This document shows, in pieces, positions 5,278 through 34,379 of a stretch of DNA of 64,000 nucleotides (position 1 is the stretch's first letter; every line of letters starts with the position of its first letter). A program made the translations under genes and the position numbers. Below the pieces are notes generated by a model. It ran no database searches. It worked only from the letters and a program-made list of their open reading frames with translations, and was not told the DNA's origin. Source of the DNA: Asterias rubens (taxonomy: Eukaryota); contig NC_047068.1 of the NCBI RefSeq assembly GCF_902459465.1, forward strand, positions 14,942,001-15,006,000. The letters are read 5' to 3'.

Positions 5278-6321
5278 TTAAGGAATTTCACGTAATTTCA
5301 TGCTGCTCGTTTTCAGGGGTTCCCTTTTAAAGGTTTCCCACCAAATACCCTGTTCAGCTGAAGATATTGAGCTTATGTCGTGGTATACACCATTTAAGTT
5401 AGAACCCAAACCCAGTGAGCAGTAATTAAACCACCAAGCTCCACGGTGGACTTCCGCACAGTTCTTGTCATGGACATTATCGTTGTCCTTATCCCTAGTT
5501 GTAAATGGCTGGCCAAAGGGCAGAGAGCCACCAGCAGGACCAGTGACTGTACCGAGATTAAGTTTGTAATTCTCACCGATAATCGAAGCATATTGGTACT
5601 TTGCATAAGCTGTTTGACCGTCCCATCCCTCAAGATCTACTCTGAGGTCCCATGACCCTAGAGAGGTCAGGGCCACTAAGATATCATTGCCAAGCCAGTA
5701 CTCACCAGATGGATCACCAAAGCCAGACTTGTACTCGGCCCAGTTGCGGTCAAAGTCTACACTGCCATCCAGTCGCCTCTGAAATACAGTCCATCCCCCA
5801 CCATCAGTCTCCATGTCACAGTATACTTGCAGAGCCTGAGTAGTGCTGCCACCTGGGTAGATGGGATACACTTTACTTTGGGTGTTTCCTGTGTTCAAGA
5901 GCTGCTTACAAGTTCCAAGTTTAGGCAACGGGCTGATCGAATGAGCAGTTGTGGACTCAGTTGATATGTAGTGAGTTGTGTCCTCATCTTCATCAAAGTA
6001 AACACTCCCTTGATCTTCAAGAAAGTCTTGGAGATGCCCAGCTCTTGTTGCATTATTCAGCTCACAGAGTTTCTTACACTCATAGAAGTTGAAAGACTTA
6101 CAGTCCTCATCCATGCTGCAATCTCGTCCACAGATGACATCATTGGCAACAGTTTTCCATTTCTGTACATAGTTTTTGAGGACCTTGTTTTCTGCACTGT
6201 GGTAAAACTGATGTTTTAGCCCACTACACAGACTTCCAAAACTCCTAGCCTGCTTCAACATTAGCAGAGACACCAGTAGACCCACGCAATGAAAATATGT
6301 CATCAAACGTACTTCCCCCAT
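5278..6321 (-). CDS. PAN/apple + fibrinogen-related domain secreted protein, copy 1 (347 aa, minimal stalk)
   Basis: Intronless ORF; first ATG 6321 (alternative 6303); hydrophobic N-terminus; CGRDCSMDEDCKSFNFYECKKLCELN PAN-like motif; FReD motifs VYCDMETDGGGWTVFQRR, EYWLGND, GAWWF, NLNG. Confidence 0.9.
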   Translation of the reverse strand: MGEVRLMTYFHCVGLLVSLLMLKQARSFGSLCSGLKHQFYHSAENKVLKNYVQKWKTVANDVICGRDCSMDEDCKSFNFYECKKLCELNNATRAGHLQDFLEDQGSVYFDEDEDTTHYISTESTTAHSISPLPKLGTCKQLLNTGNTQSKVYPIYPGGSTTQALQVYCDMETDGGGWTVFQRRLDGSVDFDRNWAEYKSGFGDPSGEYWLGNDILVALTSLGSWDLRVDLEGWDGQTAYAKYQYASIIGENYKLNLGTVTGPAGGSLPFGQPFTTRDKDNDNVHDKNCAEVHRGAWWFNYCSLGLGSNLNGVYHDISSISSAEQGIWWETFKREPLKTSSMKLREIP

Positions 6322-7119
6322 TTGGTTTCGATGGTTACAAAGTAAGGAGCAATCTCTCGTAAAGTAGAGAAAAACACACAGTGTAGAGCACAGCGTGAAA
6401 CTGGAACTCTTTAGTAAGATAATGGTCAACCAATTTGAGTAGTAGAGACACTGTACATCTTCATATGAGAGGAGTCATCAAAAATTCAGTGAATAAAAAC
6501 CACGACAACAATTTGCACTTTTTATCTTGTAGAGACCAAACAGTGACCCCACAACAAATACCCAAATCAAATCAAATCTGCAGCTTACTGATTGGTTGAT
6601 GAACTGGAGAGCAGTTGGTGGCACTTGTCCAAAAAGAACCACATTCCTCAACACAACTTGTACATTTTCTTAGGTGTAATTTTAATATGTTTTGCCTTAA
6701 ACCCGTGAAGATACCAGTGCAATAAGCACAGTATATCGCCAGTACTGTTCCGAAGGTGTTTGTGACTAGCTAAACCTTAAAGAGTAGGTGACTGAAATAA
6801 TCCATAATATTTAATTGGATACAATCGATTGACCATGAAGCTCTATTGGCTGTTGTTTCGTGTAAAACTTCCAGTGTTGGTTTGTGATTGAACAGCACCA
6901 GTCGTTATGTAACTATGAACCCAAATATAGGTTACCAGCGCCTGCTACCAGGGTGTGTGATTAAATTACGATTTTAGTTTTAATCTGACCTTGGGCAGAT
7001 TTCACAAAGAGAGCTTGACCTTAACAGCGAGTCGATCTTAATTTCTATTAGCAAAGTGTGATGTCACAATTACACATCACTATACATTGACAACTCATCT
7101 TTAGATCAATCTTAGTGCA

Positions 7120-7291
7120 CCTGATACTTCACGGAGGCAACGAAGGCGATTGCCTCCATGTCCCCTGGTCATTGCCTTAGTGCCCTTGAAATACTCCAGT
7201 AGTAATTTGAAATTTCCTTATCGGGTGCCCTTTACCAAGGAGAAAATACCTTGGTGCACTTGCCCTTTCAAAAATGAAGCATACAGGCCTG
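7120..7291. mobile_element. CAGGCCTG-bounded repeat, copy 2
   Basis: Homologous to 3433-3614. Confidence 0.55.
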
Positions 7292-7830
7292 ACCCCTGTT
7301 TCAAATAGGGAAGCTTCTATCAAAGATTTTAACAAAAATGACCTCCCAATCTTGCCGATCAATATCGGAGTGTTTTTTTTGTTCATTCTTCGCTTACCAT
7401 GAAACCTTTGTGGCAAGCAACTGGGATGAACCTTCATCGGAAACTAAAGTGTACTTGATGAAAAGTAGTTATTGGATTTCGGTTGACAATTACTGAATGC
7501 AGTAATGAAAATTTTCGACGAGATCAGCTGAGTGGAATGGACCATCTTTCAAAGAATTACATGGTCCTATATAGTTCCCATACAAATAAGTTCTTACACT
7601 TTAAATAATTTACAGAATGATTGATGAGGCTAGTTTTGTCAGAGCTTGTCAAAACTATACATCAGCAGGTTTTATTTTAATAAAAGAATAGCAAGTAGAA
7701 TTACCCTGGATGAAATAAAGGATTTAAGTATAAATATAGTGATCATCACAATGAACTCCATCAGTATCACAAAATATCGCAGTGAAAGTCACATTAGATG
7801 CTTTTCATAATATGCAGGAAATTAGAGTTC

Positions 7831-8207
7831 TTAAAGGGAAGGTACACGTTTGGTAATTACTCAAAAACAAATATTCACTTAAAAACTGACTTGGCGAGTA
7901 TTGGGGAGCTGTTGATAGTATAAAACATTTTGAGAATTGGCTCCCTCTGAAGTAGCATAGATTTTGAGAAAGAGGTAATTTCTCACTAAAATAATAAAAG
8001 ACTTCGTCTAGCCAGAAATCTTTTATTCCTATCTGAAAGCACATAAATTCGTCCAACAAAGGTGTTTTTTCTCTCATCATTTCCTCTCAACTTCGATGAC
8101 CAATTTAGCTCAAATTTTCACAGGCTTGTTATTCTATGCTTATGTTGAGATACACCAAATGAGAAGGCTGGTCTTTGACAATTACCAAACATGTACCTTC
8201 CCTTTAA
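7831..8207 (+). mobile_element. TTAA-flanked MITE family A (Kolobok-like termini)
   Basis: TTAA-AGGGAAGGTACACGTTTGGTAATT ... AATTACCAAACATGTACCTTCCCT-TTAA. Confidence 0.85.
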
Positions 8208-8654
8208 GCCACTTGGCCATGACACCCTACAGTAATGGGAGCATTAGTGGTTGCTCTATGCATCCACGGTTTATAAGTGACCACAAAAGGTAAACTTTTA
8301 GTCGATAAGATATGAGGGAAACATTGTCCTGGGTGTACACTAGTGCCCAAATAACGCCTGGTATTAATTTAGTTAATGTACACAATGCCATTTTGTTAAA
8401 ATTGACAGCAGCAAGAGGGCGCTATGTAGGTGGCTCTAATATATACAGACCAGTCAGGTTAAATTTCCTGTGACCGGATGCACAATACAGCATTTCCAGG
8501 CACTTAACGCATGACTAGATCACCGCTCTTGCATTAGTGTTCACCACAGGTAGCTTTTTGGGGGGGGACCTTGAACAGTAATCGGTTGCTGCTTGATTTT
8601 TTTGAAAAGTTGTTTAGTGCTATTTTAGTGGTTCTAAGTTTCGATCGATGAACA

Positions 8655-13460: not shown

Positions 13461-13470
13461 AGCATTAAAC

Positions 13471-13763
13471 AAGGGAATCAATGTGTGGTGAAGAGGTTTT
13501 CAACTAGTGGTTTAATCCCAACGAGGCCTGGTTCTCCTTATAAGGGAATGCTGTGCGCGTATCGCGTGATGTGGCACAACTGTTTCAGCCGTTGCTCTCG
13601 ACCAATAGGAATGAAGAAACTGTCTTAAGCACAGGTGGTGCAAGCTCGCGTGTCACGCCCATGTTCCAACACTTTTTACTGGTTATAAACAAAGGTTTAT
13701 ACACACCCACGTGACGCGCTCTCCACCAATAGGAATAGCGAAACTGTCTGAGGTATTTATGAA
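13471..13763. mobile_element. Interspersed repeat, internally deleted copy of 16952-17481
   Basis: AAGGGAATCAATGTGTGGTGAA ... GAAACTGTCTGAGGTATTTATGAA shared; the central ~240 bp of the longer copy is missing. Confidence 0.8.
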
Positions 13764-14127
13764 CTAAGGTTCAAAACGCAACAAAAAGGGTCACTGAATC
13801 TTTCTTTTTAGGAAAGATACACTGTTGAATCTGAAAAAGGTTTTGATTGATTGTTTAACCTATCAGTATCACATTTAGGACCTATAGCAAAAAGGGAATT
13901 GCAGTTTGATTGACAATTTAAACAATTCCTAAAATGATTAATTGTTTATTAATGTCACAGCTGTGGTTTCTGAAACAACAGTGAACTATACCACAACAAT
14001 AGTTCCCATTTTTACTTAGATTTCCTACTTAACGAGAAGTGGGAAATGAAAAACAAAACTTTCTGAAAATGTTTATTTCTTTTTAAAGAATGTAGAGAAG
14101 TTATGCAGCTATTACTCACTGGCATGT

Positions 14128-15426
14128 TTATCTTAACTTCATACTGCATGACTTGATTGGTTTATCCTTTATCCATTCATTCCACCGGATGCCTCGTCTG
14201 GTAGGGTAGCTCTGCCCATATTCACCATTTAAGTGAGACTTCACTGTGCAGTCTCCGAACCACCAGGCTCCATTAGCTGTGTCTGCACAATTCCCACTGT
14301 CATAGTCATCATTGTCTCTACCCTTTGTTGTGAAATCTTTCTTATTGCTATCACCCATGGAGTCTGCTTGGCCACCGTCATAATTATCGTAACTGAATTG
14401 GTAATTACTACCAGAAATGCTTACTCCACTATACTTTGCATATCCATTAGAACCTGCCCATGATTCAGCATCTACCCGTAGATTTGTATAACCTGCTGAA
14501 GTCAGTGTGACTAAGTTATCATTGCCAAGCCAGAACTCTCTTGATGGGTCACCGAAGCCAGTCTGGTATTCAGTCCAGCTTTTATAAAAGTCTAGAGTGC
14601 CATCAATTCTCTTCTGAAATACAATCCATCCTCCACCATCAGTCTTCATGTCACAGTACACCTTCATACCAGGTGCACTGGTACCCTTTGGGTAGATTGT
14701 GTATACACCACTCTCAGTGTAACCACCAGATTGAAATGCCTTACAGTCTTTGAGTTTCGGCAGGGGGCTTGGAGTTGAAACGAAGGGGGTTGTTGTCTCA
14801 GTGGTTGAGGGTCGAGTTGTGGTCTCAGTTGATGGGGGTCGAGTTGTTGGCTCAGTGGATGTGGGTCGAGTTGTTGTCTCAGTGGTTTTGGGTTGATTTG
14901 TTGTCTTAGTGGTTGAAGGTTGAGTGGTTTGGTCAGATGTGGACTTCACAGAGGATGTTTCCATTTCACAGTAAATCTGCTGACAGTTCACCAACCCATC
15001 AGGGCAGATGGTGTAATATCCACTTTTCTCAATCCCTCCCTGACAACTTTTGAAGCATTCAAATGTTTTATCAACGATGGAACGAATAGGTGTGCCCTCA
15101 TCCATGTCAAAGTACATATATTCTTGATCTTCAACAAAGTCTTCAGTGTGCTCCTTCCTTGTAGAATTGTTCAACTCACAAAACCCTCTACATTTGTAGA
15201 AGTTGAAAGACTTACAGTCTTTCTCCAGACTGCAATCTCGTCCACAGATGACATGATTGGCCACAGTTTTGTTCTTGTACACAAAGTTCTTGAGGACCAT
15301 GTTTTCAGCACTGAAGAACTGGTGTTCCAACTGACCACACTGACTGCCAAACCTTTCCGCCACCATCGATGGAGAAAACCCCCAAACTGTCATGAAATAG
15401 AGGACAGAGAGAATTCGCAGAGCCAT
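14128..15426 (-). CDS. PAN + truncated FReD-N module + mucin stalk + FReD protein, copy 2 (432 aa)
   Basis: ATG 15426, signal peptide MALRILSVLYFMTVWG, PAN Cys motif, ~5-6 degenerate 9-aa Thr/Pro repeats, complete FReD (YCDMKTDGGGWIVFQKR, EFWLGND, GAWWF). Confidence 0.92.
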   Translation of the reverse strand: MALRILSVLYFMTVWGFSPSMVAERFGSQCGQLEHQFFSAENMVLKNFVYKNKTVANHVICGRDCSLEKDCKSFNFYKCRGFCELNNSTRKEHTEDFVEDQEYMYFDMDEGTPIRSIVDKTFECFKSCQGGIEKSGYYTICPDGLVNCQQIYCEMETSSVKSTSDQTTQPSTTKTTNQPKTTETTTRPTSTEPTTRPPSTETTTRPSTTETTTPFVSTPSPLPKLKDCKAFQSGGYTESGVYTIYPKGTSAPGMKVYCDMKTDGGGWIVFQKRIDGTLDFYKSWTEYQTGFGDPSREFWLGNDNLVTLTSAGYTNLRVDAESWAGSNGYAKYSGVSISGSNYQFSYDNYDGGQADSMGDSNKKDFTTKGRDNDDYDSGNCADTANGAWWFGDCTVKSHLNGEYGQSYPTRRGIRWNEWIKDKPIKSCSMKLR

Positions 15427-16951
15427 ATTGAATCAGAGTTGACAACATTCACTTTTCAAAATAAAGGAAAAAGTAAAACTGTGTATCAGCAATCTGTTCT
15501 CAGTAGCTAGATAATTGAAGTACAGTTTATGCTAATGCACACCAGCATGTGGAATTAACATCTGGCTGTAATTGACGTGGACCTTGGTTTTATTACCAAG
15601 AGTAACACTCCAAATGCACTAATTGGTCAAACCTGGAAGTTAATACGTCTTGTCCCACTGATCATCTGATTGGCTAATGGCTTGTGTTTTTTTACCTCAC
15701 CATTTCTGTTCATTTCCCTGTGATTGGCTAACCGGTATATGTCAATACAGCAATGCTCCCAGCTGGTTGACTCCTACATCATGAAGTGACACAAGACCTT
15801 TTTAGCATCACTACTATGACATCAACCATGGATCAGGTTCACGTGTTTAATTAAACAACTCGAAAAAAGCTTCATATGTGCTTTCAGTCACCGAAACGCC
15901 CCCTGGAAAATCACTGGTTGAAAACACCTGGCAAGCACGTCTCTTAGCTGTTTACGCTCCAACTGAAGCTTGTAATGTTTGACCACATAGCCCATTCTCC
16001 CTCATTGATCTTAAGAATGGACGATCAATCAATATTCCATCAACAGACCCTCAGTTTAATGACAGCATTTTCGGTTTTCTCAACCTAGATATGCTGCTAA
16101 ATTTATTTTAAGGCGGACTAAATATTGATTGATGATGAGCAGGGGCTGGTGGTGGAAGTTCACCCAATATGAATCAGTGGATTTAATCTCTGAGCCTTGC
16201 TCTTCTTCAAAAGACAGTAAAAACAAACACCTTGTTCTCTAGTTAATACTTAACCACAACTTCTTGATTTGTGCAATTCATAATCACACTGTGTTAAACC
16301 AGTGTTTCACACAACTGGTTATTGGCATAATGAGGCAAAACATGATTGAGAGATTGACTGTTGCCAGCTTGGTGTTTATTTCCCCCTTGTGGGAGTTTAC
16401 CGAGTGGGAGTTTACCGAGTACCGAGTTCTTGTTTGGAGATCGTCTAAAACAAGCATCAAATCCTCCCCCAACTCCATTTTCTTTGTTTTAAGTTACAGG
16501 AACTCACATGACTTTTAAGAGCACAATTTTCAGGCCCTTGTAGGCATAATTACATGACCGTCCAATTTTTCACAGATTTGTTATTTTATGCATATGGTTG
16601 GGATACACCAAGTGAGGACATTGCATAAGCTCAGCAACCATGTAGCATGTCGCTGTAAACAAGACTATATATGGACAAATTAGTTTATAAGCTATACCTG
16701 TTAAATCAAGACTGATATATTTTCAGCACTACGTGCATGTGTGCGAAGTTGCAATGAAACTAAGATGAATATAAGCATGCGATTAAAGTGCAAAGCGCAA
16801 ACTACTTATACACAATGTATGCTGGTTTAGGGGCCACTTATTCGCTATTTTCCCAAATCGGTCCTAAATCATCCGTGAATACATACCCACGTGATCGGGT
16901 TTTAACCAATCAGAGTCTGGAAACTGTCTAGTGTCTAAGATATTTATTAAT

Positions 16952-17481
16952 AAGGGAATCAATGTGTGGTGAATAGGTTTTCAACTAGTGGTTTAAGCCA
17001 AACGAGGCCTGGTTCTTGATAATTTTTACAGAGACGAAGTCGAGGTAAATTATCAAGAGCCAGGCCATGGCGGGTTTAAACCACTATAGTTAAAAACCGA
17101 TTCAGCCCACTTTGATTCCCATTCATAAATACCTTTTTGGTCAAAAAACATCAACACTGTTTGGTCAAAAAATAAAATAAATGCAAAAATTATTAATTTT
17201 CAATGATTTCTTTCAACACAACACCCCTCCAGCTATGAAATGGTAAGGCCCTCGGCCTGATCGGGTTAACAACTCCTTATAAGGGAATGATGTGCGCGTC
17301 GTGCATATCGCGTGATGTGGCACAACTGTCCCGGCCGTTGCGCTCGACCAATAGGAATGAAGAAACTGTCTTATAATCACAGGTGCAAGCTCGAGTGTCA
17401 TAAACAAAGGTTTATACAAACCCACGTGACGCTCTCTCAACCATTAGGAATAGCGAAACTGTCTGAGGTATTTATGAATAA
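16952..17481. mobile_element. Interspersed repeat with ~165-bp imperfect hairpin (16954-17120)
   Basis: Arms GGGAATCAA...GGCCTGGTTCTTGATAATTT and AAATTATCAAGAGCCAGGCC...TTGATTCCC; second copy at 13471. Confidence 0.8.
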
Positions 17482-17596
17482 TAAATAAAGAATATTCATT
17501 TTGGATAATAACCAAAAATTAATATTGTTATTAACACGCTGTTACAATTATCACCCTGTTCACTATTATTATTTAAATGAAGAGATGTACTCACTA

Positions 17597-19006
17597 TTAA
17601 GGTTTACGTAGTATCATACTGCATGCTTTGATGGGTTGATTCCATTCGTACCATACAATGCCTCGTTTGACACCAAGGTTCTGCTCATATTCACCATTTA
17701 AGTGAGACTTCACTGTGCAGTCTTTGAACCACCAGGCTCCATGAGTTTGTTCTGCACAATTCTCATCGCTCGCCTCATCATTGTCTTTATCCTTTGTTGT
17801 GAACTTTTTGCCTTTGTTGTCATTAAGAGAGTTTTTTGCAGGTGCCCCTAATTTGTAATTGGTATAAGTGAATATATATTCACTTCCAGTAACGCTTACA
17901 CCATCATACTCTACATATCCTGTTTCACCATCTGATTCAAGAACCACCCGTAGCTTGGTAAAACCTGCTGAGGTCAGGGCCACCAAGTTCTCATTGCCAA
18001 GCCAGTACTCACCAGATGGATCACCAAAGCCAGACTTGTACTCATCCCAGTTGCGGTCAAAGTCTACACTGCCATTCAGTCGCCTCTGAAATACAATCCA
18101 TCCCCTATCATCAGTCACCATGTCGCAGTACACCCGCATATCAGCTGCACTGGATCCACTTGGGTAGACTGTGTATACGTTACTCCTGCTATAACCAGTA
18201 TCTCGAAACTCTTGGCAGCTGCTGAGTTTAGGCAGGGGGCTCTGAGCTGAAAAGAAGGGAGTTGTTGGCTCAGTGGATGAGGGTTGAGCTGTTGGCTCAG
18301 TGGATGAGGGTCGAGTTGTTGGCTCAGTGGATGAGGGTTGAGTTGTTGGCTCAGTGGATGAGGGTTGAGTTGTTGGCTCAGTGGATGAGGGTTGAGTTGT
18401 TGGCTCAGTGGATGAGGGTTGAGTTGTTGGCTCAGTGGATGAGGGTTGAGTTGTTGGCTTAGTGGATGAGGGTTGAGTTGTTGGCTCAGTGGATGAGGGT
18501 TGAGTGGTCTGGTCTGTTATAGATGTCTTCACAGAGGATGTTTCCATTTCACAGTAAATCTGCTGACAGTTCACCAACCCATCAGGGCAGATGGTGTAAT
18601 ATCCACTTTTCTCAATCCCTCCCTGACAACTTTTGAAGCATTCAAAAGTTTTATCAACGGTGGAACGAATAGGTGTGCCCTCATCCATGTCAAAGTACAA
18701 ACTTTCTTGATCTTCAACAAAGTCTTCAGTGTGTTCCGTCCTTGTAGAATTGTTCAACTCACAAAACCCTCTACATTTGTAGAAGTTGAAAGACTTACAG
18801 TCTTTCTCCAGACCGCAATCCCGTCCACAGATGACATGATTGGCCACAGTTTTGTTCTTGTACACAAAGTTCTTGAGGACCATGTTTTCAGCACTGAAGA
18901 ACTGGTGTTTTAACTGACCACACTGACTGCCAAACCATTCCGCCATCGATGGAGAAAACCCCCAAATTGTCATGAAATAGAGGACAGAGAGAATTTGCAG
19001 ATCCAT
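17597..19006 (-). CDS. PAN + truncated FReD-N + mucin stalk + FReD protein, copy 3 (469 aa)
   Basis: First ATG 19006 (the ORF-track start at 19039 is TTG); signal peptide; PAN; ~9 EPTTQPSST repeats; complete FReD. Confidence 0.92.
   Translation of the reverse strand: MDLQILSVLYFMTIWGFSPSMAEWFGSQCGQLKHQFFSAENMVLKNFVYKNKTVANHVICGRDCGLEKDCKSFNFYKCRGFCELNNSTRTEHTEDFVEDQESLYFDMDEGTPIRSTVDKTFECFKSCQGGIEKSGYYTICPDGLVNCQQIYCEMETSSVKTSITDQTTQPSSTEPTTQPSSTKPTTQPSSTEPTTQPSSTEPTTQPSSTEPTTQPSSTEPTTQPSSTEPTTRPSSTEPTAQPSSTEPTTPFFSAQSPLPKLSSCQEFRDTGYSRSNVYTVYPSGSSAADMRVYCDMVTDDRGWIVFQRRLNGSVDFDRNWDEYKSGFGDPSGEYWLGNENLVALTSAGFTKLRVVLESDGETGYVEYDGVSVTGSEYIFTYTNYKLGAPAKNSLNDNKGKKFTTKDKDNDEASDENCAEQTHGAWWFKDCTVKSHLNGEYEQNLGVKRGIVWYEWNQPIKACSMILRKP
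18262..18512 (-). repeat. Coding 27-bp minisatellite (~9 units) in copy 3
   Basis: GAGTTGTTGGCTCAGTGGATGAGGGTT repeated. Confidence 0.95.
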
Positions 19007-19359
19007 ATTGAAACAGAGTTGACAACATTCACTCTTCAAGAAACAATGATGACATTAAATTGCACTCAGCAATTTTTGTTTGTTGAAGTGTTAGTTTGAG
19101 CACACGGCAAAGTCTAGAATCGTTTCCAACTTGCAGTTCTAGTATGTGGTCGTTGTTTTCCACCAGTGGTTTCTTTCCAAACACACTAGTTGGTCATATA
19201 TCTCTGAGACGATGCAACTTGTCCGATCAGTCACCTGATTGGTTAGTATTTTATGGTTTCATGTGACCATTTCGATGACTTATCCAGTGATTGGTCTTCA
19301 TGTAATTGTTCTAGCTAGGTGACTGGTACATCATTCCATCACTCCCACAGAGGCTGTTT

Positions 19360-21783: not shown

Positions 21784-22541
21784 TTTAGCAGATGTTCTTT
21801 ACAAACACAAGTTCTTTGAGTAGCTACTGTCGTAAAAACAAATTCAATATTCCAGACCCCAATCACATTATTAAAAAAAGTATAATAAATTGATTCTTAT
21901 ATAGCACTTTATCACATGAAGGGATCAGGATGGCTATTCATTTGTGCTTCAGTCACCAAAACGACTCATCCTGAGAAAAAAAAAAAGAAAAAAAAATTCC
22001 TCCAGGCACATCTTTTTTGCAATATATGTATGCTTCAGCTGGACAAAGCTTAATTGCAGTGTCTGATCCTATGCCTTATTGTGTTGCTCAATTTCAAAAG
22101 AATAGAGGATCAATATTCATTAGATTATGAGGTATTCTCATGCATAAACTCATAATAATTTTGTTCTTCTAATTTTCTTATAACTTTTCAATCTGCAGAC
22201 CAGATAATAAAATTATTACCCGTATATGGGCTCGCTATTCTAAATTGCAAAAGAAGAAAAGTTAAACACTGGTACTCAATTGTGAGGTTTATCACCGAGT
22301 CTGTGTGTGTGCAATAATTGAGCGATAACTCAAGAAGGACTTGGCATATCAGCACAAAACTTGATTTTGAATCGGTTTTGGGATCCCCCAGAAGCCTCTT
22401 ATTTTTTTTGACCCCCTCAATAATTATCAAGGTAAAACTGCTATTGTGATGGATGCAAAGTGGGACCCTTTGTTGGGTTTCCGGTCAAATGCAATTTGAC
22501 AGGATTCTTTTCCACTCTGTTCTCTTTATGAATAGCTAGCA

Positions 22542-22918
22542 TTAAAGGCACTGTACACGTTTTGTAATTGTCAAAGACCAGTGTTCTCACTTGGTGTATC
22601 CCATCATTAGCATAAAATAACAAGCCTGTGAAGATTTGGGCTCAATCGGTCATCGAAGTTGCGAGAAAATAATGAAAGAAAAAACACCCTTGTTTGATGA
22701 ATTTGTGTGCTTTCAGATAGGAATAAAAGACTTCTAGCTAGAAGTCTTTTATTATTTAAGTGAGAAATTACCTCTTTCTCAAAAACTATGTTACTTCAGA
22801 AGGGAGTCGTTTCCCACAATGTTTCATACTATCAACAGCTCTCCATTGCTTGTTACCAAGTCAGTTTTTAAAATAATATTTGTTTTGAGTAATTACCAAA
22901 CATGTACCTTCCCTTTAA
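22542..22918 (-). mobile_element. TTAA MITE family A, inverted
   Basis: TTAAAGGCACTGTACACG ... CATGTACCTTCCCTTTAA; reverse complement of the 7831 copy. Confidence 0.88.
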
Positions 22919-23720
22919 GAGCAGGCATCTCTCTGAGAAATCTAATAATGCAATCAAGGACATAAAAACCCAATCTAGCATTCTGTTGATCTGCTAGAAA
23001 GTCAGGATTGTTTTCCTATCTATTTAATAATCCTGGCTTCTCATATAGCACTCAGGTTCGTCACTCAGTGACGCTCATGAAGCTAGTTGAAACATTGAGT
23101 CAAATTAAGAAATCGTTCCGCGGTAGTGAAGTTTATAACAAGAAGTCCCCTAGATCCGCTAAAGTAGTAGTCCCAGCCATATTTCTACCTTGCAATAGTT
23201 GCAGGACAGTTCTTTTCAGAGCTGAGAAAATCTACTCCAGATCAGTGGAATATAAGTTCTCAAAAGAACTTAATTTACCAGGCAAGAAAATACACACATG
23301 ATGTAAAACCCTAAACCAAATATATATTATATATACCATAAAATGCTTCATATCCCATAAAATAAATTTAGGTCTTGAAACTGAAACTGCTCTGAACTGA
23401 AGAGTTTGTCAAAATTTGTACATCTGTGACGACAATGGTGGTGTTTCATGGTGGTACAAACTTGAGCACTATCTTAGCACAGATATCTAAAAACTATTTA
23501 TACAACTATTTATTTTAAATGTTATTATTTTATGTGTATAATTAAAACAGATCCAGCAGCTCAATCTGTGTATATTGGTTGCTATGGGTATAGTATCTAA
23601 ACTGTTCAGTTGGTCCGACTTTCAGAAGTTATTCAAACACAGTGGTCAAGTTTCTAGCAGATGTTCTTTGAGTAGTTACTGTCATGAAAAGACCCCATTC
23701 ACAGTTTAAAAAATACTTTC

Positions 23721-24294: not shown

Positions 24295-26454
24295 TTAAGG
24301 TTTACGTAGTTTCATACAGCATACTTTGATGGGTTGATTCCATTTGTACCATACAATGCCTCGTCTGCCAACAGGGTTTTGCTCATATTCACCATTTAGG
24401 TGAGACTTGACTGTGCAGTCTTTGAACCACCAGGCTCCATGAGTTTGTTCTGCACAATTCTCGCCATTATCGTTGTCGTCCTTTGTTTGAAATGGATTAT
24501 TCTTGTTGTCATTTAGAGAGTCATCTGCATTGCCACCTATGAAATTGTCATAACTGAATATATATTCAATACCAGTAATGCGAACTCCACTATACTCTGC
24601 ATGTCCTTCTTCACCTGTCCATGTTGTAAGATCTACTCGTAGATTGGTATAACCTGCTGAGGTAAGTTCCACTAAGTTATCATTGCCAAGCCAGAATTCT
24701 CCTGATAGGTCACCGAAGCCAGTCTGGTATTCTGTCCAGTTGCGATAAAAGTCTACACTGCCATCAATTCGCCTCTGAAATACAATCAATCCCCTACCAT
24801 CAGTCTCCATGTCACAGTACACCTTCATACCACTGGGTCCACTTGGGTAGATTGTGTATACATTACTCTTGCTATAACCAGCATCTCGAAACTCCTGACA
24901 GCTGCTGAATTTAGGCAGGGGGCTCTGAGTTGAAAAGAAGTGAGTTGTTGGATCACTGGTCAATTGATGAGTTGTTGGCTCAGTGGATGAGGGTTGAGTT
25001 GTTGGCTCAGTGGATGAGGGTTGAGTTGTTGGCTCAGTGGATGAGGGTTGAGTTGTTGGCTCAGTGGATGAGGGTTGAGTTGTTGGCTCAGTGGATGAGG
25101 GTCGAGTTGTTGGCTCAGTGGATGAGGGTCGAGTTGTTGGCTCAGTGGATGAGGGTTGAGTTGTTGGCTCAGTGGATGAGGGTTGAGTTGTTGGCTCAGT
25201 GGATGTGGGTTGAATTGTTGGCTCAGTGGATGAGGGTTGAGTTATTGGCTCAGTGGATGAGGGTTGAGTTGTTGGCTCAGTGGTTGAGGGTTGAGTTGTT
25301 GGCTCAGTGGATGAGGGTTGAGTTGTTGGCTCACTGGATGTGGGTTGAGTTGTTGGCTCAGTGGATGTGGGTTGAGTTGTTGGCTCAGTGGATGAGGGTT
25401 GAGTTGTTGGCTCAGTGGATGAGGGTTGAGTTGTTGGCTCACTGGATGTGGGTTGAGTTGTTGGCTCAGTGGATGAGGGTTGAGTTGTTGGCTCAGTGGA
25501 TGAGGGTTGAGTTGTTGGCTCAGGGGTTGAGGGTTGAGTTGTTGGCTCAGTGGATGAGGGTTGAGTTGTTGGCTCAGTGGATGAGGGTTGAGTTGTTGGC
25601 TTAGTGGATGAGGGTTGAGTTGTTGGCTCAGTGGATGAGGGTTGAGTTGTTGGCTCACTGGATGAGGGTTGAGTTGTTGGCTCACTGGATGAGGGGTGAA
25701 TTGTTGGTTCAGTGGATAAGGGTTGAGTTGTTGGTTCAGTGGATGAGGGGTTAGTTGTTGGCTCAGTGGATGAGGGTTGAGTTGTTGGCTCAGTGGATGA
25801 GGGTTGAGTTGTTGGCTCAGTGGTTGAGGGTTGAGTTGTTGGCTCAGTGGATGAGGGTAGAGTTTTTGGCTCAGTTGATGAGGGTTGAGTTGTTTGCACA
25901 TTGGATGAGGGGTGAGTTGTTGGTTCAGTGGATAAGGGTTGAGTTGTTGGTTCAGTGGATAAGGGTCGAGTTGTTGGCTCAGTGGATGAGGGTTGAGTTG
26001 TTGGCTCAGTAGATAATGGTCGGGTGCTTGGCTGAACCAAAAGTTCTTTACAACTTTTGAAGAGAGTGAGAGAGTTTTTAGCCACTGAGAAGATGGGTGT
26101 GTCCTCATCTGCATCAAAGTGTACACTCCCTTGATCTTCAAGAAAGTCTCGAGGATGCTCAGCTCTTGATGCATTATTCAGCTCACAGAGTTTCTTACAT
26201 TCATAGAAGTTGAAAGACTTACAGTCCTCATCCATGCTGCAATCTCGTCCACAGATGACATAATTAAGTGTGGTTTTAGTCTTGTACTCAGAATTCTTAA
26301 GAACTCTGTTTTCTGCACCAATCAATTGTTTTTTCAGTGAACCACATTTCCCTCTGTCAATTCCAAAGCTCTTCACCGATAATGAGTTGATCAATGCCAG
26401 TATAAAAATAACATTCAACTGTAAAACACAGATCATCAACACCCGTTGAATCAT
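24295..26454 (-). CDS. PAN + long mucin stalk + FReD protein, copy 4 (719 aa)
   Basis: First ATG 26454 (26478 is GTG); hydrophobic leader; PAN motif; ~40 9-aa repeats; complete FReD ending KLRKP. Confidence 0.92.
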   Translation of the reverse strand: MIQRVLMICVLQLNVIFILALINSLSVKSFGIDRGKCGSLKKQLIGAENRVLKNSEYKTKTTLNYVICGRDCSMDEDCKSFNFYECKKLCELNNASRAEHPRDFLEDQGSVHFDADEDTPIFSVAKNSLTLFKSCKELLVQPSTRPLSTEPTTQPSSTEPTTRPLSTEPTTQPLSTEPTTHPSSNVQTTQPSSTEPKTLPSSTEPTTQPSTTEPTTQPSSTEPTTQPSSTEPTTNPSSTEPTTQPLSTEPTIHPSSSEPTTQPSSSEPTTQPSSTEPTTQPSSTKPTTQPSSTEPTTQPSSTEPTTQPSTPEPTTQPSSTEPTTQPSSTEPTTQPTSSEPTTQPSSTEPTTQPSSTEPTTQPTSTEPTTQPTSSEPTTQPSSTEPTTQPSTTEPTTQPSSTEPITQPSSTEPTIQPTSTEPTTQPSSTEPTTQPSSTEPTTRPSSTEPTTRPSSTEPTTQPSSTEPTTQPSSTEPTTQPSSTEPTTQPSSTEPTTHQLTSDPTTHFFSTQSPLPKFSSCQEFRDAGYSKSNVYTIYPSGPSGMKVYCDMETDGRGLIVFQRRIDGSVDFYRNWTEYQTGFGDLSGEFWLGNDNLVELTSAGYTNLRVDLTTWTGEEGHAEYSGVRITGIEYIFSYDNFIGGNADDSLNDNKNNPFQTKDDNDNGENCAEQTHGAWWFKDCTVKSHLNGEYEQNPVGRRGIVWYKWNQPIKVCCMKLRKP
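24943..26030 (-). repeat. Coding 27-bp minisatellite (~40 units) in copy 4
   Basis: Same 27-bp unit as copies 3 and 6; ~1090 bp with no frameshift. Confidence 0.95.
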
Positions 26455-28189: not shown

Positions 28190-30240
28190 CCATGTGGCCT
28201 TGATTTTACAGATAACATGATACAGTTCTTAAATAAAACTCTGATCATGCTACAAAGGAATGCTGCTTCAAATATATTAAATGAAAGTATTCAGAGCCTT
28301 TACTGCATTGGTCACTATTGTTCACGTATTGTCATGTTACAAGTTTTGAGTCGGCTTTGTTCAAAGGTATTCCACCAAATACCGTTGTAAGGAAGTGTTT
28401 TAACTGGAACATATTGGCCATTGAAGTTTGACTTCAAGCAGGCATTATACCACCAGGGTCCCTTGTGAGTTATTGCACAGTTACCATTTATTTTTTCATC
28501 ATGATCTCTATCATTTGTAGTAAAGGGATACACTTTATTATGGGTGTTTCCTGCGTTCAAGAGCTGCTTACAAGTTCCAAGTTTAGGCATTGGGATCTTC
28601 GTTGATGAGTAGTGAGTTATAGACTCAGTTGATGAAGGGTGAGATGTAGACTCAGTTGATGAGTAGTGAGTTGTGGGCTCAGTCAATGAGGGGTGAGTTG
28701 CAAGCTCATTCAATTAGGTGGGAGTTGTGAGCAAAGATGCCAAGAAGTCAGCTGTGTCCTCATCTGCATCAAAGTATACACTCCCTTGATCTTCATTGTA
28801 GTTGAAAGACTTACAATCGTCATCCATGCTGCTATCTCGTCAACAAATGACATAATTGGCAACAGTTTTCTGTTTGTGTGCATGGTTTTGAATAACTCTG
28901 TTTTTTTTGCACTGTGCAGTAGGTGTTCAGTTTCACCACACTGAAATCCTACAACATTGGTTATCAGCATAGAAAACACACACAAATTTGCTGAGCTTAA
29001 AAAGACTGCCCATCCTTTTGGAGCCATCTTTTCTTAATATTTATCCAACGAATCAATTTGATGCTACTTGTTATAACAACGCAAGTTCAACCACTCCAAG
29101 ACCAACAACTCTTTTCTGGAGGCCTTAGACATTCAATTTAGCTATAAGTATCAATTTGTGCAGGCACTTCACAAATCGTTATTAGTCACTGATTGTCTAT
29201 TCTCGCTGGATGACCATTCAGCTGTTTTCTCTTCCCACTTTTTTCTATGTCTCTAAAGCTGTACTTAACTTCAAGCGAGCTGTGCCGGCCTACTTTTCCC
29301 AAGAGCCTTAATTTTTCGACCTGAAACGGCCTTCCTTTTTTTCAACGATTCAGTTAATAGAAACCTCTTTTAAGTGCCCTTTTTCTTTTCTTTTTCTATT
29401 TAGATTTTTTTTAAGCAATCGCAATTGATCCAATCATGTATGAATTCAAAGTAAGCCCAGTTTCCTGGATTGAAGTTGAGCCTAGACAAAGCCCTCTGTA
29501 AGACTTAGAAATTTGAACAAAAGGAGAGTTAAATTTACAGGCACTATCAGATAATTTTCTGGCTGACTCTTAATCTTCTTAAGGTATTACAGCGTTATAT
29601 CTTTTACTTTTTAGTGTTTTAAGGTTCACAGTTGGAAAACAAGTACAAAACCAATGAGAACTGTTGCAAAAAAGTATAACTAAAGAGGGACAATATGAGG
29701 TCCATGGTTGCAGGTATCTACACACTTGTGTGCTCAGGTAGGTATCCCATGGTCCTATAACAAAAGGGACAATAAATACAAACCAGATCCCTAAGGTTGC
29801 GTGTGTCACACATTTAAGCATTTCTCATTTACTATGTTCCTTTGTGCATCCGGCCTCCACCCCCACCCCACAGTCAAAGCCATCTCAATTAAATACGGAT
29901 TTATTCATTGCATTGTTAATTCAGTTGTATATTATCTGCTATAGCCAACTGAAGGTCATACATTTAAGCCTCTTCAAGTTATTTTTAGTCACCAACCTTA
30001 GCTTTAAAATGTGCCACACAAGCATCTAATGTGACTCACTGTCCAATAAAATAAGTAAACAACATGACAACAACTTTTTTTTTTTTAATAGAAACTAATA
30101 TCAATTGCAGATTAACAAAACTACATGTTTTTGATTTTCCTGACTCAATTAATTTTTTCTTTTTCTTTTGTAAGCAATTCCACCAATTCCTTTTTAAAAT
30201 TTAATTATCAAACCTTTCTTAAACAGATTTTAATTTAAGA
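28190..30240. repeat. Segmental duplicate of 32920-35700 (gene 6 plus flanks)
   Basis: Flanks align by eye: AAAACTCTGATCATGCTACAAAG, TCTGGAGGCCTTAGACATTCAATT, AAAAGGAGAGTTAAATTTACAG, TCTCAATTAAATACGGATTTATTCAT in both. Confidence 0.85.
28315..29027 (-). pseudogene. PAN-FReD pseudogene, copy 5 (paralogue of copy 6)
   Basis: Starts MAPKGWAV like copy 6; +2 frameshift in an A run (28891-28898); in-frame TGA at 28840-28842 replacing the Gly of CGRDC; TAA near 28714; 63-bp PAN deletion and 363-bp FReD deletion. Confidence 0.9.
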
Positions 30241-31429: not shown

Positions 31430-32999
31430 GTAATCTGCAGAGACAGCTTCTCTTCTAATATCTGATTTGTTGTGCATTGAGTTTTTTCATCCATCTTGGA
31501 TTTACAGTTTTATTTTTTGCGCAGATTTCTTAAGATTGACAAACTTTGTATAAAGACAAAGTATACAGAATAGCACCCTGCATTAATGTTAAAAATAGAA
31601 GCTCAATTTGGTTGTCACCCCTGTATTGAGTTTCACTGACATACTTGCATGTGCATCTCCAAGCCATTGTCAGTGTTTTAAACTGTTATTGTACCATACT
31701 ACAACGGTATATCGCATCGATGTGGTGATGTTATAAGTGGTGGAAAGATTGTATGACACCCAGGTGTTTTGAGCAAGTGACATCATTAGTGCAGAGCGCT
31801 ATTGATAGATGTAGAAACAAAAATCGATCAGTGTTAATTTCAAATGTCAGTCGTTATTAAGGTCATGCCTGAATTTTGTCTGAAATACTGTCCCAAGTTT
31901 AGGAAACTTGCTGCTGAAAATCCCTACATGTTACATACTTTGATTTCTGCAACTGAAATAAGCCCATAAGCGGAGTATGCATGACAATACATAAACTGTT
32001 TAATATATTTTATACAATGTGACCATTAAATTAGATAAAAATTCACATCTTGTTACTATGTGAATTTGTTAAAAATTAGGCGATAGGAAATAATCAGGCC
32101 AAAAAATTACTTTTCCCTTTAAATGTTGTGAATGGTCAAATGTTTACAGATTTTCAAATACTTTATAAAAAAATTGTTTCACACACGTAAGTAGACATCA
32201 ACTAACCCACCCCATCTCAATTCCCAAACATGAATAAATATTTGTTTACATAATAATATTAAAAACAAAGATTTACAATAACAATCCATTTGTGATGTAA
32301 TATTATCCCCAAATCTTCCTTTCTTGTGTTATTAACCAGCATGCAATTTCTCATCCCATTTCAGCTGGTTTCCTCGTTTTGTCTTTTTCTTTTTTGTGCC
32401 CAGTAAAACCCCCAAAGCCCAAACCACTTTTCAAAGTGTTGTGTACAAAAGACACTTCCTCAACAGAGTTTCATGTTTATAGTTCAGTTTAAAAGAAGAA
32501 ATCAAATGACCCCCATCTTACCACTCCCTTGCTACCATGGTGGGCTCAACATTTTGAAATCCACTATGGCCATTGATCCATTCAAACTTCAGAACATACA
32601 CAAAATTTGAATACTTAAACAGGCACCCCCTAATTTTTAACCCTTAGAATTCAACAAAATGTGATTAAATAGCCTGAAATGTGTATCCTAACATATGCAT
32701 AAAATAACAAGTCTTTGAAATTTTTTACTCGATTCGTCAATAAAGTTGCAAGAGAACACTTAAAGAAAATTTATTGCACAAATTTGAATTCATGGCACAG
32801 CTACAGCTAATGCGTGATTCTCACATAGCAACAGCCGCAGCCATAATCATGTGCATACTGCTTTAATTTAATGTGACACATAATATCAGCCATTTTTTCA
32901 ATGGGCAGAGAGTAGTATGGCATTGAGTTTACAGATCACATGATATCGTTTTTATATAAAACTCTGATCATGCTACAAAGAAATGCTGGTTCATGAATA

Positions 33000-34379
33000 T
33001 TAGATGAAAGTATTCAGAGCTTTTACTTCATCGGTAATTGTTTTTTCACGTATTTTCATGTTACATGTTTTGAGACGGGCTTTTACAAAGGTATCCCACC
33101 AAATACCCTGGTAAAGCATTATGCTTGCTGGAAAATATTTGCCATTTAAGTTTGACCTCATGCAGGAATTATACCACCAGGGTCCCTTGAAAGTTATTGC
33201 ACAGTTACCATTTTGTCTTTCATCATGATCTCTATCATTTGTAGTAAAGGGTTGCCCATTGTGAATGTCAAGAGAGTCCCCAGCAGTACCTGTGTATTCA
33301 CCCACTGTAAGTTTGTAATTCTCACCAGTAATCGTAAATGATTGGTACTTTGCATAAGCTGTTTGACCGTCCCATACCTCAAGATCAATTCTGAGGTCCC
33401 ATGACCCATTAGAGGTCAGGCCCACTAAGATATCATTGCCAAGCCAGTACTCACCAGATGGATCACCAAAGCCAGACTTGTACTCAGCCCAGTTGCGGTC
33501 AAAGTCTACACTGCCATCCAGTCGCCTCTGAAATACAGTCCATCCCCCACCATCAGTCTCCATGTCACAGTATACTTGCAGAGCCTGAGTAGCGCTGCCA
33601 CCTGGGTAGATGGGATACACTTTACTTTGGGTGTTTCCTGCGTTGAAGAGCTGCTTACAAGTTCCAGGTTTAGGCATTGGGATCTTGCTTGATGAGGGTT
33701 GAGCTGTTGGCTCAGTTGATATGGGTTGAGTTGTTGGCTCAGTGGTTGAGGGTTGAGTTGTTGGCTCAGTGGTTGAGGGTGGAGTTGTTGGCTCAGTGGA
33801 TGAGGGTTGAGTTGTTGGCTCAGTAGATGAGGGTTGAGTTGTTGGCTCAGTGGATGAGGGTTGAGTTGTTGGCTCAGTGGATGAGGGTTGAGTTGTTGGC
33901 TCAGTGGATGAGGGTTGAGTTATTGGCTCAGTGGATGATGGTTGAGTTGTTGGCTCAGTGGATGAGGGTTGAGTTGTTGGCTGATCCAAAAGTTCTTTAC
34001 AACTTTTGAAGAGAGTGAAAGAGTTATCAGCCACTGAGTAGATGGGAGTGTCCCTATCTGCATCAAAGTATACACTCCCTTGATCTTCAAGAAAATCTTG
34101 AGGATGCTCAGCTCTTGTTGCATTATTCAGCTCACAGAGTTTGTTACATTCTTTGAAGTTGAAAGACTTACAGTCCTCATCCATGCTGCAATCTCGTCCA
34201 CAGATGACATAATTGGCAACAGTTTTCTGTTTGTGTGCTAGGTTTTGAAGAACTCTGTTTTCTGCACTGTGTAGGTGTTCAGTTTCACCACACTGAAACT
34301 CTATAGCATTGGTTATCAGCATAGAAAACACACAAAAACATGCTGAGTATAAAATGACTGCCCATCCTTTTGGGGCCAT
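33000..34379 (-). CDS. PAN + mucin stalk + FReD protein, copy 6 (459 aa)
   Basis: ATG 34379, signal peptide, PAN motif, ~11 repeats, complete FReD (GPWWYNSCMRSNLNG). Confidence 0.93.
   Translation of the reverse strand: MAPKGWAVILYSACFCVFSMLITNAIEFQCGETEHLHSAENRVLQNLAHKQKTVANYVICGRDCSMDEDCKSFNFKECNKLCELNNATRAEHPQDFLEDQGSVYFDADRDTPIYSVADNSFTLFKSCKELLDQPTTQPSSTEPTTQPSSTEPITQPSSTEPTTQPSSTEPTTQPSSTEPTTQPSSTEPTTQPSSTEPTTPPSTTEPTTQPSTTEPTTQPISTEPTAQPSSSKIPMPKPGTCKQLFNAGNTQSKVYPIYPGGSATQALQVYCDMETDGGGWTVFQRRLDGSVDFDRNWAEYKSGFGDPSGEYWLGNDILVGLTSNGSWDLRIDLEVWDGQTAYAKYQSFTITGENYKLTVGEYTGTAGDSLDIHNGQPFTTNDRDHDERQNGNCAITFKGPWWYNSCMRSNLNGKYFPASIMLYQGIWWDTFVKARLKTCNMKIREKTITDEVKALNTFI
33688..33982 (-). 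repeat. Coding 27-bp minisatellite (~11 units) in copy 6
   Basis: Same unit as copies 3 and 4. Confidence 0.95.

What the first reader, a model, noticed from the sequence alone, without database searches (positions are those of the whole stretch)
5278..34379. Secreted PAN - variable mucin stalk - FReD family with stalk length from about 1 to about 40 repeats
Seen: six paralogues share signal peptide, PAN-like domain and FReD, separated by a 27-bp/9-aa (EPTTQPSST) array of about 1-2, 5-6, 9, 40, 4 (pseudogene) and 11 units, always in frame. None has the collagen (ficolin) or coiled-coil (angiopoietin/fibrinogen) N-terminus, and none has a transmembrane segment or coding intron. Established: FReDs are often pattern-recognition lectins in invertebrates, PAN domains bind proteins or glycans, and Thr/Ser/Pro repeats form O-glycosylated rods. 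Inference: a family of two-headed cross-linkers with graded spacer length (immune opsonins, mucus or adhesive components). I cannot confirm that the architecture is undescribed.
Basis: partly seen in the sequence, partly recalled or inferred. Interest (0 to 1): 0.75.

Follow-up and report, generated by a model that had tools for sequence, protein, structure and literature searches.

The report
Sea-star PAN–mucin stalk–FReD gene cluster
A sea star (Asterias) carries a tandem cluster of intronless genes for secreted proteins with a PAN head, a sugar-coatable 9-amino-acid repeat stalk and a fibrinogen-type head. The stalk length changes 2- to 5-fold between sister species, and the repeats act as a junction where the two heads are swapped between gene copies.

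Summary
Five intact single-ORF genes and one pseudogene lie on the minus strand. Each encodes a signal peptide, a PAN_1 domain (above Pfam's cut-off, and it folds as PAN/apple), a 27-bp/9-aa Thr/Ser/Pro array of about 2, 6, 10, 41, 4 and 11 units, and a Fibrinogen_C domain.

The window is Asterias rubens. I fetched the syntenic cluster of A. amurensis. Every orthologue has an array, but of very different length: 32 vs 11, 19 vs 4, 7.5 vs 39, 22 vs 9, and 10 vs 5 copies. Synonymous divergence between the species is only about 0.06. Public contigs carry g3 alleles with 8, 9 and 10 units.

Arrays of different genes share one identical 27-nt consensus. Breaks in synonymous divergence fall at the arrays, so signal+PAN and FReD modules have been exchanged there. 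The "graded" lengths are therefore a snapshot, not a conserved design.

PAN+FReD without a stalk is a large, automatically annotated family in echinoderms, molluscs and cnidarians. NCBI's A. amurensis models splice the arrays out, which hides the stalked form.

The FReD acetyl pocket of ficolin, TL5A and FIBCD1 is not conserved, so these are not ficolins. Expression was not shown and function is inferred.

The parts
5278..6321 (-). g1: signal peptide, PAN, about 2 degenerate 9-aa units, FReD (347 aa). It lacks the family's C-terminal Cys.
   Evidence: identical to the annotated protein P0008; AF2 model pLDDT 83
14128..15426 (-). g2: signal, PAN type B, 40-aa fragment of a FReD A-subdomain, 6-unit stalk, FReD (432 aa)
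   Evidence: exact sequence is in the public collection as P0121
14789..14929 (-). g2 27-bp array, 5.2 copies, 83% matches
17597..19006 (-). g3: mosaic gene. The N-part is g2-like (96% nt). The array and FReD are g4-like (83% nt). The B subdomain holds a g1-like patch. 469 aa.
18259..18505 (-). g3 27-bp array, 9.1 copies, 97% matches
24295..26454 (-). g4: signal, PAN type A, remnant of a FReD start (…FKSCKELL), 41-unit stalk, FReD (719 aa)
24968..26014 (-). g4 27-bp array, 38.8 copies, 94% matches. 16 of its 41 units are identical to the 27-nt consensus.
28315..29027 (-). g5 pseudogene (g6-like): frameshift, two stops, PAN and FReD deletions. Its decayed array of about 4 units lies at 28601-28728.
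33000..34379 (-). g6: signal, PAN type A, …FKSCKELL remnant, 11-unit stalk, FReD (459 aa). PAN spans residues 40-106 and FReD residues 240-444.
33691..33982 (-). g6 27-bp array, 10.8 copies, 93% matches
34422..34427 (-). TATAAA box 48 nt upstream of the g6 ATG (a consensus match only)

Best explanation
This is a syntenic, fast-evolving tandem cluster of intronless genes in Asterias. They encode secreted proteins with two globular heads, an N-terminal PAN/apple module and a C-terminal fibrinogen-related domain. A mucin-type Thr/Ser/Pro stalk, encoded by a 27-bp coding minisatellite, joins the heads. Three things are shown. (a) The domain architecture is as described. (b) The minisatellite expands and contracts very quickly: 2- to 5-fold between A. 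rubens and A. amurensis orthologues, and 8 to 10 units among g3 alleles. (c) The arrays of different paralogues are kept alike, and they sit at the breakpoints where signal+PAN modules and FReD modules have been exchanged between paralogues by unequal crossing-over or gene conversion. The rest is inferred. The products would be extracellular and heavily O-glycosylated. They would be bivalent binders whose two heads are held apart by an extended stalk of variable length, roughly 4 to 90 nm at 0.25 nm per residue. They most likely act as humoral or mucosal recognition and agglutination factors. The ligand-binding (P) part of the FReD and the stalk length are free to diversify, while the PAN core is conserved. 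The ligands are not the ficolin-type acetyl groups by default, because the pocket residues differ, and they differ between paralogues.
For: Architecture. PAN fold: the best PDB matches of the PAN-only model are PAN/apple modules, namely the SML-2 lectin, the HGF N domain, plasminogen and factor XI. FReD: E = 1e-45 to 1e-60 to tenascin-R, the ficolins, FIBCD1 and TL5A. The NCA…C disulfide spacing is kept. So is the acidic loop (DRDHD against DRDND/DRDSD) that I take, from my own knowledge, to be the Ca2+ loop. Orthology: collinear 92-95% identical DNA between the window and A. amurensis CP134962.1. Orthologue dS is 0.03-0.10. Array copies are 10.8/31.8, ~4/18.7, 38.8/7.5, 9.1/22.2 and 5.2/10.2. 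Alleles: P0006 and P0136 carry 8 and 9 units against 10 in g3. P0136 has a FReD 100% identical to g3 and an N-part 100% identical to g2. Mosaicism shows in synonymous sites. For g2-g3, dS is 0.05 in the N-part and 0.48 in the FReD. For g3-g4 it is 2.2 against 0.33. For g1-g6 it is 0.04-0.07 in FReD subdomains A+B and 0.93 in subdomain P. The arrays of g3, g4 and g6 share an identical 27-nt consensus although their flanks are only 61-65% identical. Selection: all four orthologue pairs keep open frames. The chance of that under random substitution is 0.06-0.11 per gene, about 5e-5 jointly. Omega is 0.36 for the PAN core (p = 0.007 against neutrality), 0.64 for FReD A+B and 0.96 for FReD P. Indirect immune link: 'ficolin-2-like' transcripts of the asteriid Pycnopodia rise in wasting disease (PMC4503460 and bioRxiv 10.1101/2025.07.05.662347).
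Against: Expression is not shown. No indexed RNA run holds more than 0.12 of the words of g2+g3 or 0.10 of g6. The runs I laid covered intergenic DNA as well as genes, which is how DNA behaves. The exact g3, g4 and g6 proteins are absent from the public protein collection. Overall omega between orthologues is high (0.6-0.8), which also fits relaxed constraint. The acetyl pocket of FIBCD1 (Y405, H415, Y431, A432; PMC3908420) reads F, M, Y, gap in g6, then H, S, S, A in g1, and T, T, K, R in g3. Lectin activity is therefore unproven. O-glycosylation, oligomeric state and both ligands are untested. I could not verify that the Pycnopodia contigs are PAN-FReD genes.
Confidence: 0.6

Rival explanations
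1. These are structural or lubricating mucus, cuticle or adhesive glycoproteins of the body surface or tube feet. The PAN and FReD heads would cross-link the secretion's own glycans rather than recognise microbes.
For: The mucin-type stalk reaches 372 residues. There are two potential binding heads. The FReD pocket is not of the microbial acetyl-binding type. Stalk length tolerates large changes, as in gel-forming and tethered mucins.
Against: I found no paper that links FReD or PAN proteins to the Asterias footprint or adhesive proteomes. The proteins are small and lack the VWD/C8/CK oligomerisation modules of gel-forming mucins. The fast evolution of the P subdomain is more typical of recognition proteins.
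Confidence: 0.2
2. These are gamete-recognition or other reproductive proteins. Their repeat number and binding surface would evolve fast under sexual selection, as in oyster bindin (comparison from my own knowledge).
For: Omega is near 1 in the P subdomain. Repeat number differs greatly between sister species. Modules recombine.
Against: No expression data of any kind. The family is large and its names come from homology to immune lectins. Related 'ficolin-2-like' transcripts respond to disease in Pycnopodia.
Confidence: 0.07
3. The arrays are introns. The mature proteins would be the usual stalkless PAN-FReD proteins of about 340 aa, as NCBI's A. amurensis models have it.
For: P0058, P0072 and P0049 equal the genomic ORFs minus in-frame GT…AG segments of 216, 741 and 408 nt. 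Each repeat unit ends in a pyrimidine-rich stretch followed by AG.
Against: The 5' sites (GTGGCT, GTTAAT, GTTCCA) are poor. The removed segments also hold non-repetitive sequence that is conserved in frame between species. This is the 40-aa FReD fragment, with 1-3 replacements. The public model of g2 keeps its array. Arrays in intact genes stay 90-97% homogeneous and Thr/Ser/Pro-rich, while those of the pseudogenes have decayed to 76-79%. The ORF argument is weak inside the array itself, because a second frame is also open there.
Confidence: 0.08
4. The genes are unexpressed and drifting towards pseudogenes, and the array variation is neutral minisatellite behaviour.
For: No RNA support was found. 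Omega is 0.6-0.8 overall. One copy is already dead in both species. g3, g4 and g6 are not in the public protein set.
Against: Four orthologue pairs are intact, with a joint chance of about 5e-5. The PAN core is under purifying selection. All structural cysteines and the acidic (presumed Ca2+) loop are kept.
Confidence: 0.05

Closest known systems
Stalkless PAN_1 + Fibrinogen_C proteins of sea stars, with similar clusters in molluscs and cnidarians. They are automatically named 'ficolin-2-like', 'microfibril-associated glycoprotein 4-like' or 'ryncolin-like'.
   Same: Same two domains in the same order. They are 40-56% identical to the window's proteins, about 340 aa long, and many lie in tandem on single Patiria and Asterias chromosomes.
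   Different: Their PAN abuts the FReD; the usual PAN-to-FReD distance is about 69 residues against 154-451 here. I found no experimental paper on them. Other members carry unrelated Thr/Ser/Pro stalks (P0010, P0092, P0116, P0014), so stalk insertion recurs.
Ficolins, tachylectin 5A and FIBCD1 (acetyl-group-binding FReD lectins)
   Same: Same FReD fold, the same two disulfides, and the same acidic (presumed Ca2+) loop.
   Different: There is no collagen-like or coiled-coil oligomerisation region. The S1 pocket residues Y405, H415, Y431 and A432 are replaced, and differently in each paralogue type.
Biomphalaria FREPs and sea-urchin Sp185/333 (diversified invertebrate immune gene families; comparison from my own knowledge)
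   Same: Tandem multigene families whose variants arise by recombination or gene conversion among paralogues. They have repeat or linker regions between modules.
   Different: FREPs carry IgSF domains and an interceding region, not PAN plus a mucin array. Sp185/333 is not homologous. No somatic diversification or immune induction has been shown here.
Lectins and adhesins on variable tandem-repeat necks: L-SIGN/DC-SIGN neck VNTR, and yeast FLO/ALS adhesins (my own knowledge)
   Same: A binding head sits on a repeat stalk. Its copy number is polymorphic, changes by unit slippage, and mediates recombination between paralogues.
   Different: Those proteins are anchored to a membrane or cell wall at one end. 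Here both ends are soluble binding domains.
PAN/apple carbohydrate- and heparin-binding modules (Sarcocystis SML-2, Toxoplasma MIC4, the HGF N domain)
   Same: They are the best structural matches of the N-terminal domain.
   Different: Sequence identity is only 17-20%. The binding residues were not compared. None of them is fused to a FReD.

Membership tests
Fibrinogen-related domain (Pfam PF00147) proteins | Domain match above the curated cut-off | tested here: met
   169-225 bits against a cut-off of 22, in all five genes
Fibrinogen-related domain (Pfam PF00147) proteins | A-subdomain and P-subdomain disulfides, and the acidic loop taken to bind Ca2+ | tested here: met
   SC…VYCDM and NCA-13 residues-C are kept. 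DRDHD/DKDND aligns to DRDND (tenascin-R) and DRDSD (FIBCD1). That this loop is the Ca2+ site is my own knowledge.
Ficolin / TL5A / FIBCD1-type acetyl lectins | S1 pocket Tyr405, His415, Tyr431, Ala432 (FIBCD1 numbering; PMC3908420) | tested here: not met
   g6 reads F, M, Y, gap. g1 reads H, S, S, A. g3 reads T, T, K, R. g2 and g4 were read by alignment to g3.
Ficolins | N-terminal collagen-like region | tested here: not met
   No Collagen match. The N-terminus is PAN.
PAN/apple module (Pfam PF00024) | Domain match above the curated cut-off, and conserved core cysteines | tested here: met
   25.9-31.1 bits against a cut-off of 21.4. Four core Cys are invariant in 74 sequences.
PAN/apple module (Pfam PF00024) | PAN fold (a helix packed on a beta-sheet) | tested here: met
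   AF2 gives strand, helix, then three strands, with pLDDT 82-92 in the core. The best PDB matches are PAN/apple modules at E down to 1e-3 and TM 0.5. The model's mean pLDDT is only 65.
Mucin-type PTS tandem-repeat domain | Tandem repeats rich in Thr, Ser and Pro | tested here: met
   9-aa units with 51-56% Ser+Thr and 15-23% Pro
Mucin-type PTS tandem-repeat domain | Dense O-glycosylation | not testable with these tools
   Needs glycoproteomics
Biomphalaria-type FREPs | One or two IgSF domains upstream of the FReD | tested here: not met
   No Ig family match
Expressed, functional genes | Transcripts or peptides | tested here: inconclusive
   No RNA run holds more than 0.12 of the words. The laid runs behaved like DNA. 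Open frames conserved in two species argue for function.

The most novel reading that the evidence does not exclude
The cluster would be a germline diversification device for extracellular recognition in sea stars. A coding minisatellite would serve both as a length-variable spacer and as a shared homology tract, so that unequal exchange deals out new combinations of PAN head, stalk length and FReD head among paralogues and alleles. Individuals would then carry different repertoires. Functionally this would parallel Sp185/333 or the FREPs, built from other parts. A further possibility is that the in-frame AG at the end of every unit allows stalk length to be varied by splicing.
Probability: 0.2. 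Interest if true: 0.75.

Novelty: new variant of a known kind. Interest (0 to 1): 0.5.

Why it matters
FReD proteins are a main arm of invertebrate humoral recognition, and how they diversify without antibodies is an open theme. This locus offers a concrete, testable case. The same five genes in two sister species differ 2- to 5-fold in stalk length. Their heads have been recombined at the repeat array. The ligand-binding subdomain evolves at a near-neutral rate while the frames stay open.

There is also a practical warning. Homology-guided gene models remove such arrays as introns. Stalked lectins are therefore under-counted, and they are mislabelled as ficolins in echinoderm annotations and in expression studies of sea star wasting disease that rely on those names.

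Tried and rejected
(1) Expression by reads. The four runs laid on 13600-19400 covered intergenic DNA as much as genes, at low depth, and only transposon-like stretches had high depth. A second run search with the g6 coding region found no RNA run above 0.10 of the words. This shows neither expression nor silence.

(2) I first read the A. amurensis proteins P0072, P0049, P0058 and P0019 (338-350 aa, 1-2 units) as showing that the stalks expanded only in A. rubens. The genomic DNA refuted this. The ORFs are 422-640 aa with 7.5-32 copies, and the models splice the arrays out.

(3) The 'long' Patiria hits (497-690 aa) are not stalked. They are two tandem PAN-FReD genes fused in one model.

Position and mosaic fit, and the mosaic is shared with A. 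amurensis. But the two halves differ in age (dS 0.05 against 0.33), the FReD holds a third, g1-like patch, and the flanks are not shared.

(5) Positive selection could not be demonstrated. Pooled omega in the P subdomain is 0.96, not above 1, and no site-model software was available.

(6) Literature. No paper in the held library pairs 'PAN domain' with FReD or FREP, or links fibrinogen-type proteins to Asterias footprints. One search was wasted because 'pan' matched 'pancreatic'.

(7) The PDB sequence search found no match for the PAN part. Only the fold search did.


Full report
**What is there.**
Between 5.3 and 34.4 kb the minus strand carries five uninterrupted ORFs and one broken copy. 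With ATG starts the intact genes are:
- g1, 5278-6321, 347 aa
- g2, 14128-15426, 432 aa
- g3, 17597-19006, 469 aa
- g4, 24295-26454, 719 aa
- g6, 33000-34379, 459 aa

Each scores as PAN_1 (25.9-31.1 bits, cut-off 21.4) and as Fibrinogen_C (169-225 bits), and as nothing else. Tandem Repeats Finder reports 27-bp arrays of 5.2, 9.1, 38.8, about 4 and 10.8 copies. In 9-aa register the stalks have 2, 6, 10, 41 and 11 units of the type TEPTTQPSS. They are 51-56% Ser+Thr and 15-23% Pro. No hydrophobic segment follows the signal peptide.

g5 (28315-29027) is a true pseudogene. It has a frameshift near codon 40, two stops, a PAN deletion, and a FReD deletion of about 120 codons.

**Do the domains fold as claimed?**
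An AlphaFold model of g1, built with 73 homologues, has mean pLDDT 83. A PAN-only model of g6 has a confident core (pLDDT 82-92) but mean pLDDT 65. Its order of elements is strand, helix, then three strands. Its best PDB matches are PAN/apple modules: the galactose-binding lectin SML-2, the HGF N domain, plasminogen, and factor XI/prekallikrein. E-values go down to 1e-3 and TM is about 0.5.

The FReD aligns to tenascin-R, the ficolins, FIBCD1 and TL5A at E = 1e-45 to 1e-60. Both disulfides are kept, and so is the acidic loop (DRDHD against DRDND/DRDSD) that I take to be the Ca2+ loop.

**Whose genome, and how common is the architecture?**
The window's own proteins sit on a 21,886,259-bp contig. 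An Asterias rubens protein is recorded on a contig of the same length.

Most of the best 120 database hits carry PAN_1 plus Fibrinogen_C. They come from Patiria miniata, Asterias and Acanthaster, are about 340 aa long, have no stalk, and are named 'ficolin-2-like', 'MFAP4-like' or 'ryncolin-like'. Atlas clusters with both domains exist for echinoderms, molluscs and cnidarians. So PAN+FReD is a known architecture at the database level, although I found no paper that describes it.

The long Patiria hits are fused tandem gene models, not stalked proteins. Other members carry unrelated Thr/Ser/Pro stalks: P0010 with 11 units of STEPTTAYP, plus P0092, P0116 and Acanthaster P0014.

**The sister-species comparison.**
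I fetched the A. amurensis locus (L002 and L003, from CP134962.1). It is collinear with the window at 92-95% DNA identity.

| Gene | Window length (aa) | A. amurensis length (aa) | Window array copies | A. amurensis array copies |
|---|---|---|---|---|
| g6 / a6 | 459 | 640 | 10.8 | 31.8 |
| g5 / a5 (pseudogene) | – | – | about 4 | 18.7 |
| g4 / a4 | 719 | 422 | 38.8 | 7.5 |
| g3 / a3 | 469 | 586 | 9.1 | 22.2 |
| g2 / a2 | 432 | 477 | 5.2 | 10.2 |

Orthologue dS is only 0.03-0.10. Every array has therefore changed 2- to 5-fold in a short time, and the rank order is reversed.

Two contigs from public metagenome assemblies encode g3 alleles with 8 and 9 units, against 10 here. One of them, P0136, has a FReD identical to g3 and an N-part identical to g2. 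Stalk length is labile. It is not a fixed graded series.

**An annotation artefact that hides the stalks.**
The NCBI proteins P0058, P0072 and P0049 of A. amurensis equal the genomic ORFs minus in-frame GT…AG segments of 216, 741 and 408 nt. These segments remove the arrays, and their 5' splice sites are poor. I had first taken these short proteins at face value, and the DNA corrected me. In A. rubens the exact g3, g4 and g6 proteins are absent from the public collection, while g1 and g2 are present.

**Module exchange at the arrays.**
Synonymous divergence jumps within gene pairs:

| Gene pair | First region | dS | Second region | dS |
|---|---|---|---|---|
| g2-g3 | N-part | 0.05 | FReD | 0.48 |
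| g3-g4 | N-part | 2.2 | FReD | 0.33 |
| g1-g6 | FReD subdomains A+B | 0.04-0.07 | FReD subdomain P | 0.93 |

The signal peptides of g1, g4 and g6 cannot be aligned, yet their PAN cores are 88-98% identical. g3 also has a g1-like patch in its B subdomain.

The arrays of g3, g4 and g6 share the identical 27-nt consensus ACTGAGCCAACAACTCAACCCTCATCC, although their flanks are only 61-65% identical. In g3 the switch from g2-like to g4-like sequence falls in the first units of the array.

Other combinations occur in public sequences: a g1 N-part with a g2/g3-type FReD in P0033, and a g4-type PAN with a g2-type FReD in P0019.

The g3 mosaic is real, and A. amurensis shares it. But its halves differ in age, so one crossover is not the whole story.

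g4 and g6 keep a remnant of a FReD start before the stalk. g2 and g3 keep a 40-aa fragment of a FReD A-subdomain there. Both are conserved between the species and look like scars of non-homologous exchanges.

**Are the genes alive?**
Random substitutions at the observed density would leave an orthologue pair without a stop only 6-11% of the time. For all four pairs the joint chance is about 5e-5.

Pooled omega values between orthologues are:
- 0.36 in the PAN core (p = 0.007 against neutrality)
- 0.64 in FReD subdomains A+B
- 0.96 in the P subdomain

The pseudogene arrays have decayed to 76-79% matches, against 90-97% in most intact genes. The g2 and a2 arrays are lower, at 83-87%.

This argues for translated genes with a conserved PAN and a freely changing binding subdomain. 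Positive selection is not shown.

Direct expression evidence is lacking. Indirectly, 'ficolin-2-like' transcripts of the asteriid Pycnopodia are raised in wasting disease (PMC4503460; bioRxiv 10.1101/2025.07.05.662347). I could not check that those contigs are PAN-FReD genes.

**What do they bind?**
The acetyl pocket of FIBCD1, TL5A and the L- and M-ficolins uses Tyr405, His415, Tyr431 and Ala432 (PMC3908420). In HMMER alignments to FIBCD1:
- g6 has Phe, Met, Tyr and a gap.
- g1 has His, Ser, Ser and Ala, plus a 3-residue insertion.
- g3 has Thr, Thr, Lys and Arg.
- g2 and g4 resemble g3.

These are not ficolins. There is also no collagen region. The pockets differ between paralogue types, and the basic pair in g2-g4 hints at anionic ligands. 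That last point is inference.

**Verdict.**
The thing itself is a new variant of a known kind: a stalked, minisatellite-bearing, recombining branch of the marine-invertebrate PAN-FReD family. Its function is still to be shown.

Noticed in passing
L002:10001-11269, L002:16043-17803, L003:10001-11434 (A. amurensis CP134962.1): Public gene models remove the coding minisatellites as in-frame GT…AG 'introns' of 216, 741 and 408 nt. The deposited proteins (350, 339 and 341 aa) are therefore 72-247 residues shorter than the open genomic frames.
   Followed up: yes
window 14950-15069 and 18533-18652 (minus strand): g2 and g3 carry, between PAN and stalk, a 40-aa copy of the start of a FReD (up to the …YCEMET motif) with five cysteines. 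It is conserved in A. amurensis. g4 and g6 keep only an 8-residue remnant (…FKSCKELL), which leaves an extra cysteine.
   Followed up: partly
window 5139-5245 and 4563-5082: An interstitial telomere-like (GGGTTA)n tract of about 18 units lies 33 nt beyond the g1 stop codon. Next to it are 41-bp and 104-bp tandem repeats.
   Followed up: no
window 13600-13793, 16122-17479, 19226-19400: These stretches have word depths of thousands to millions in all four laid runs. They also match copies elsewhere in the window (7827-8207, 22540-22924, 37319-37661, 54341-54475). They are high-copy transposon-like repeats between the genes. One of them replaces the g2-like upstream region of g3 that the public contig L001 still has.
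   Followed up: partly
window 56253-57647 and 59447-59974 (plus strand): ORFs with ubiquitin carboxyl-terminal hydrolase (UCH) matches. These are probably exons of a deubiquitinase gene and are unrelated to the cluster.
   Followed up: no
window 34956-35634: A 342-bp direct duplication (97% identical) lies about 600 bp upstream of g6.
   Followed up: no
window 5278-5300 (C-terminus of g1): g1 alone has lost the family's conserved C-terminal cysteine (…KTSSMKLR instead of …K.C.MK.R).
   Followed up: no
L002:6611-7115: The A. amurensis counterpart of the pseudogene keeps a 19-copy decayed array (79% matches) with no open PAN or FReD beside it. A public 466-aa model (1085-7157) joins it to the neighbouring gene.
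   Followed up: partly
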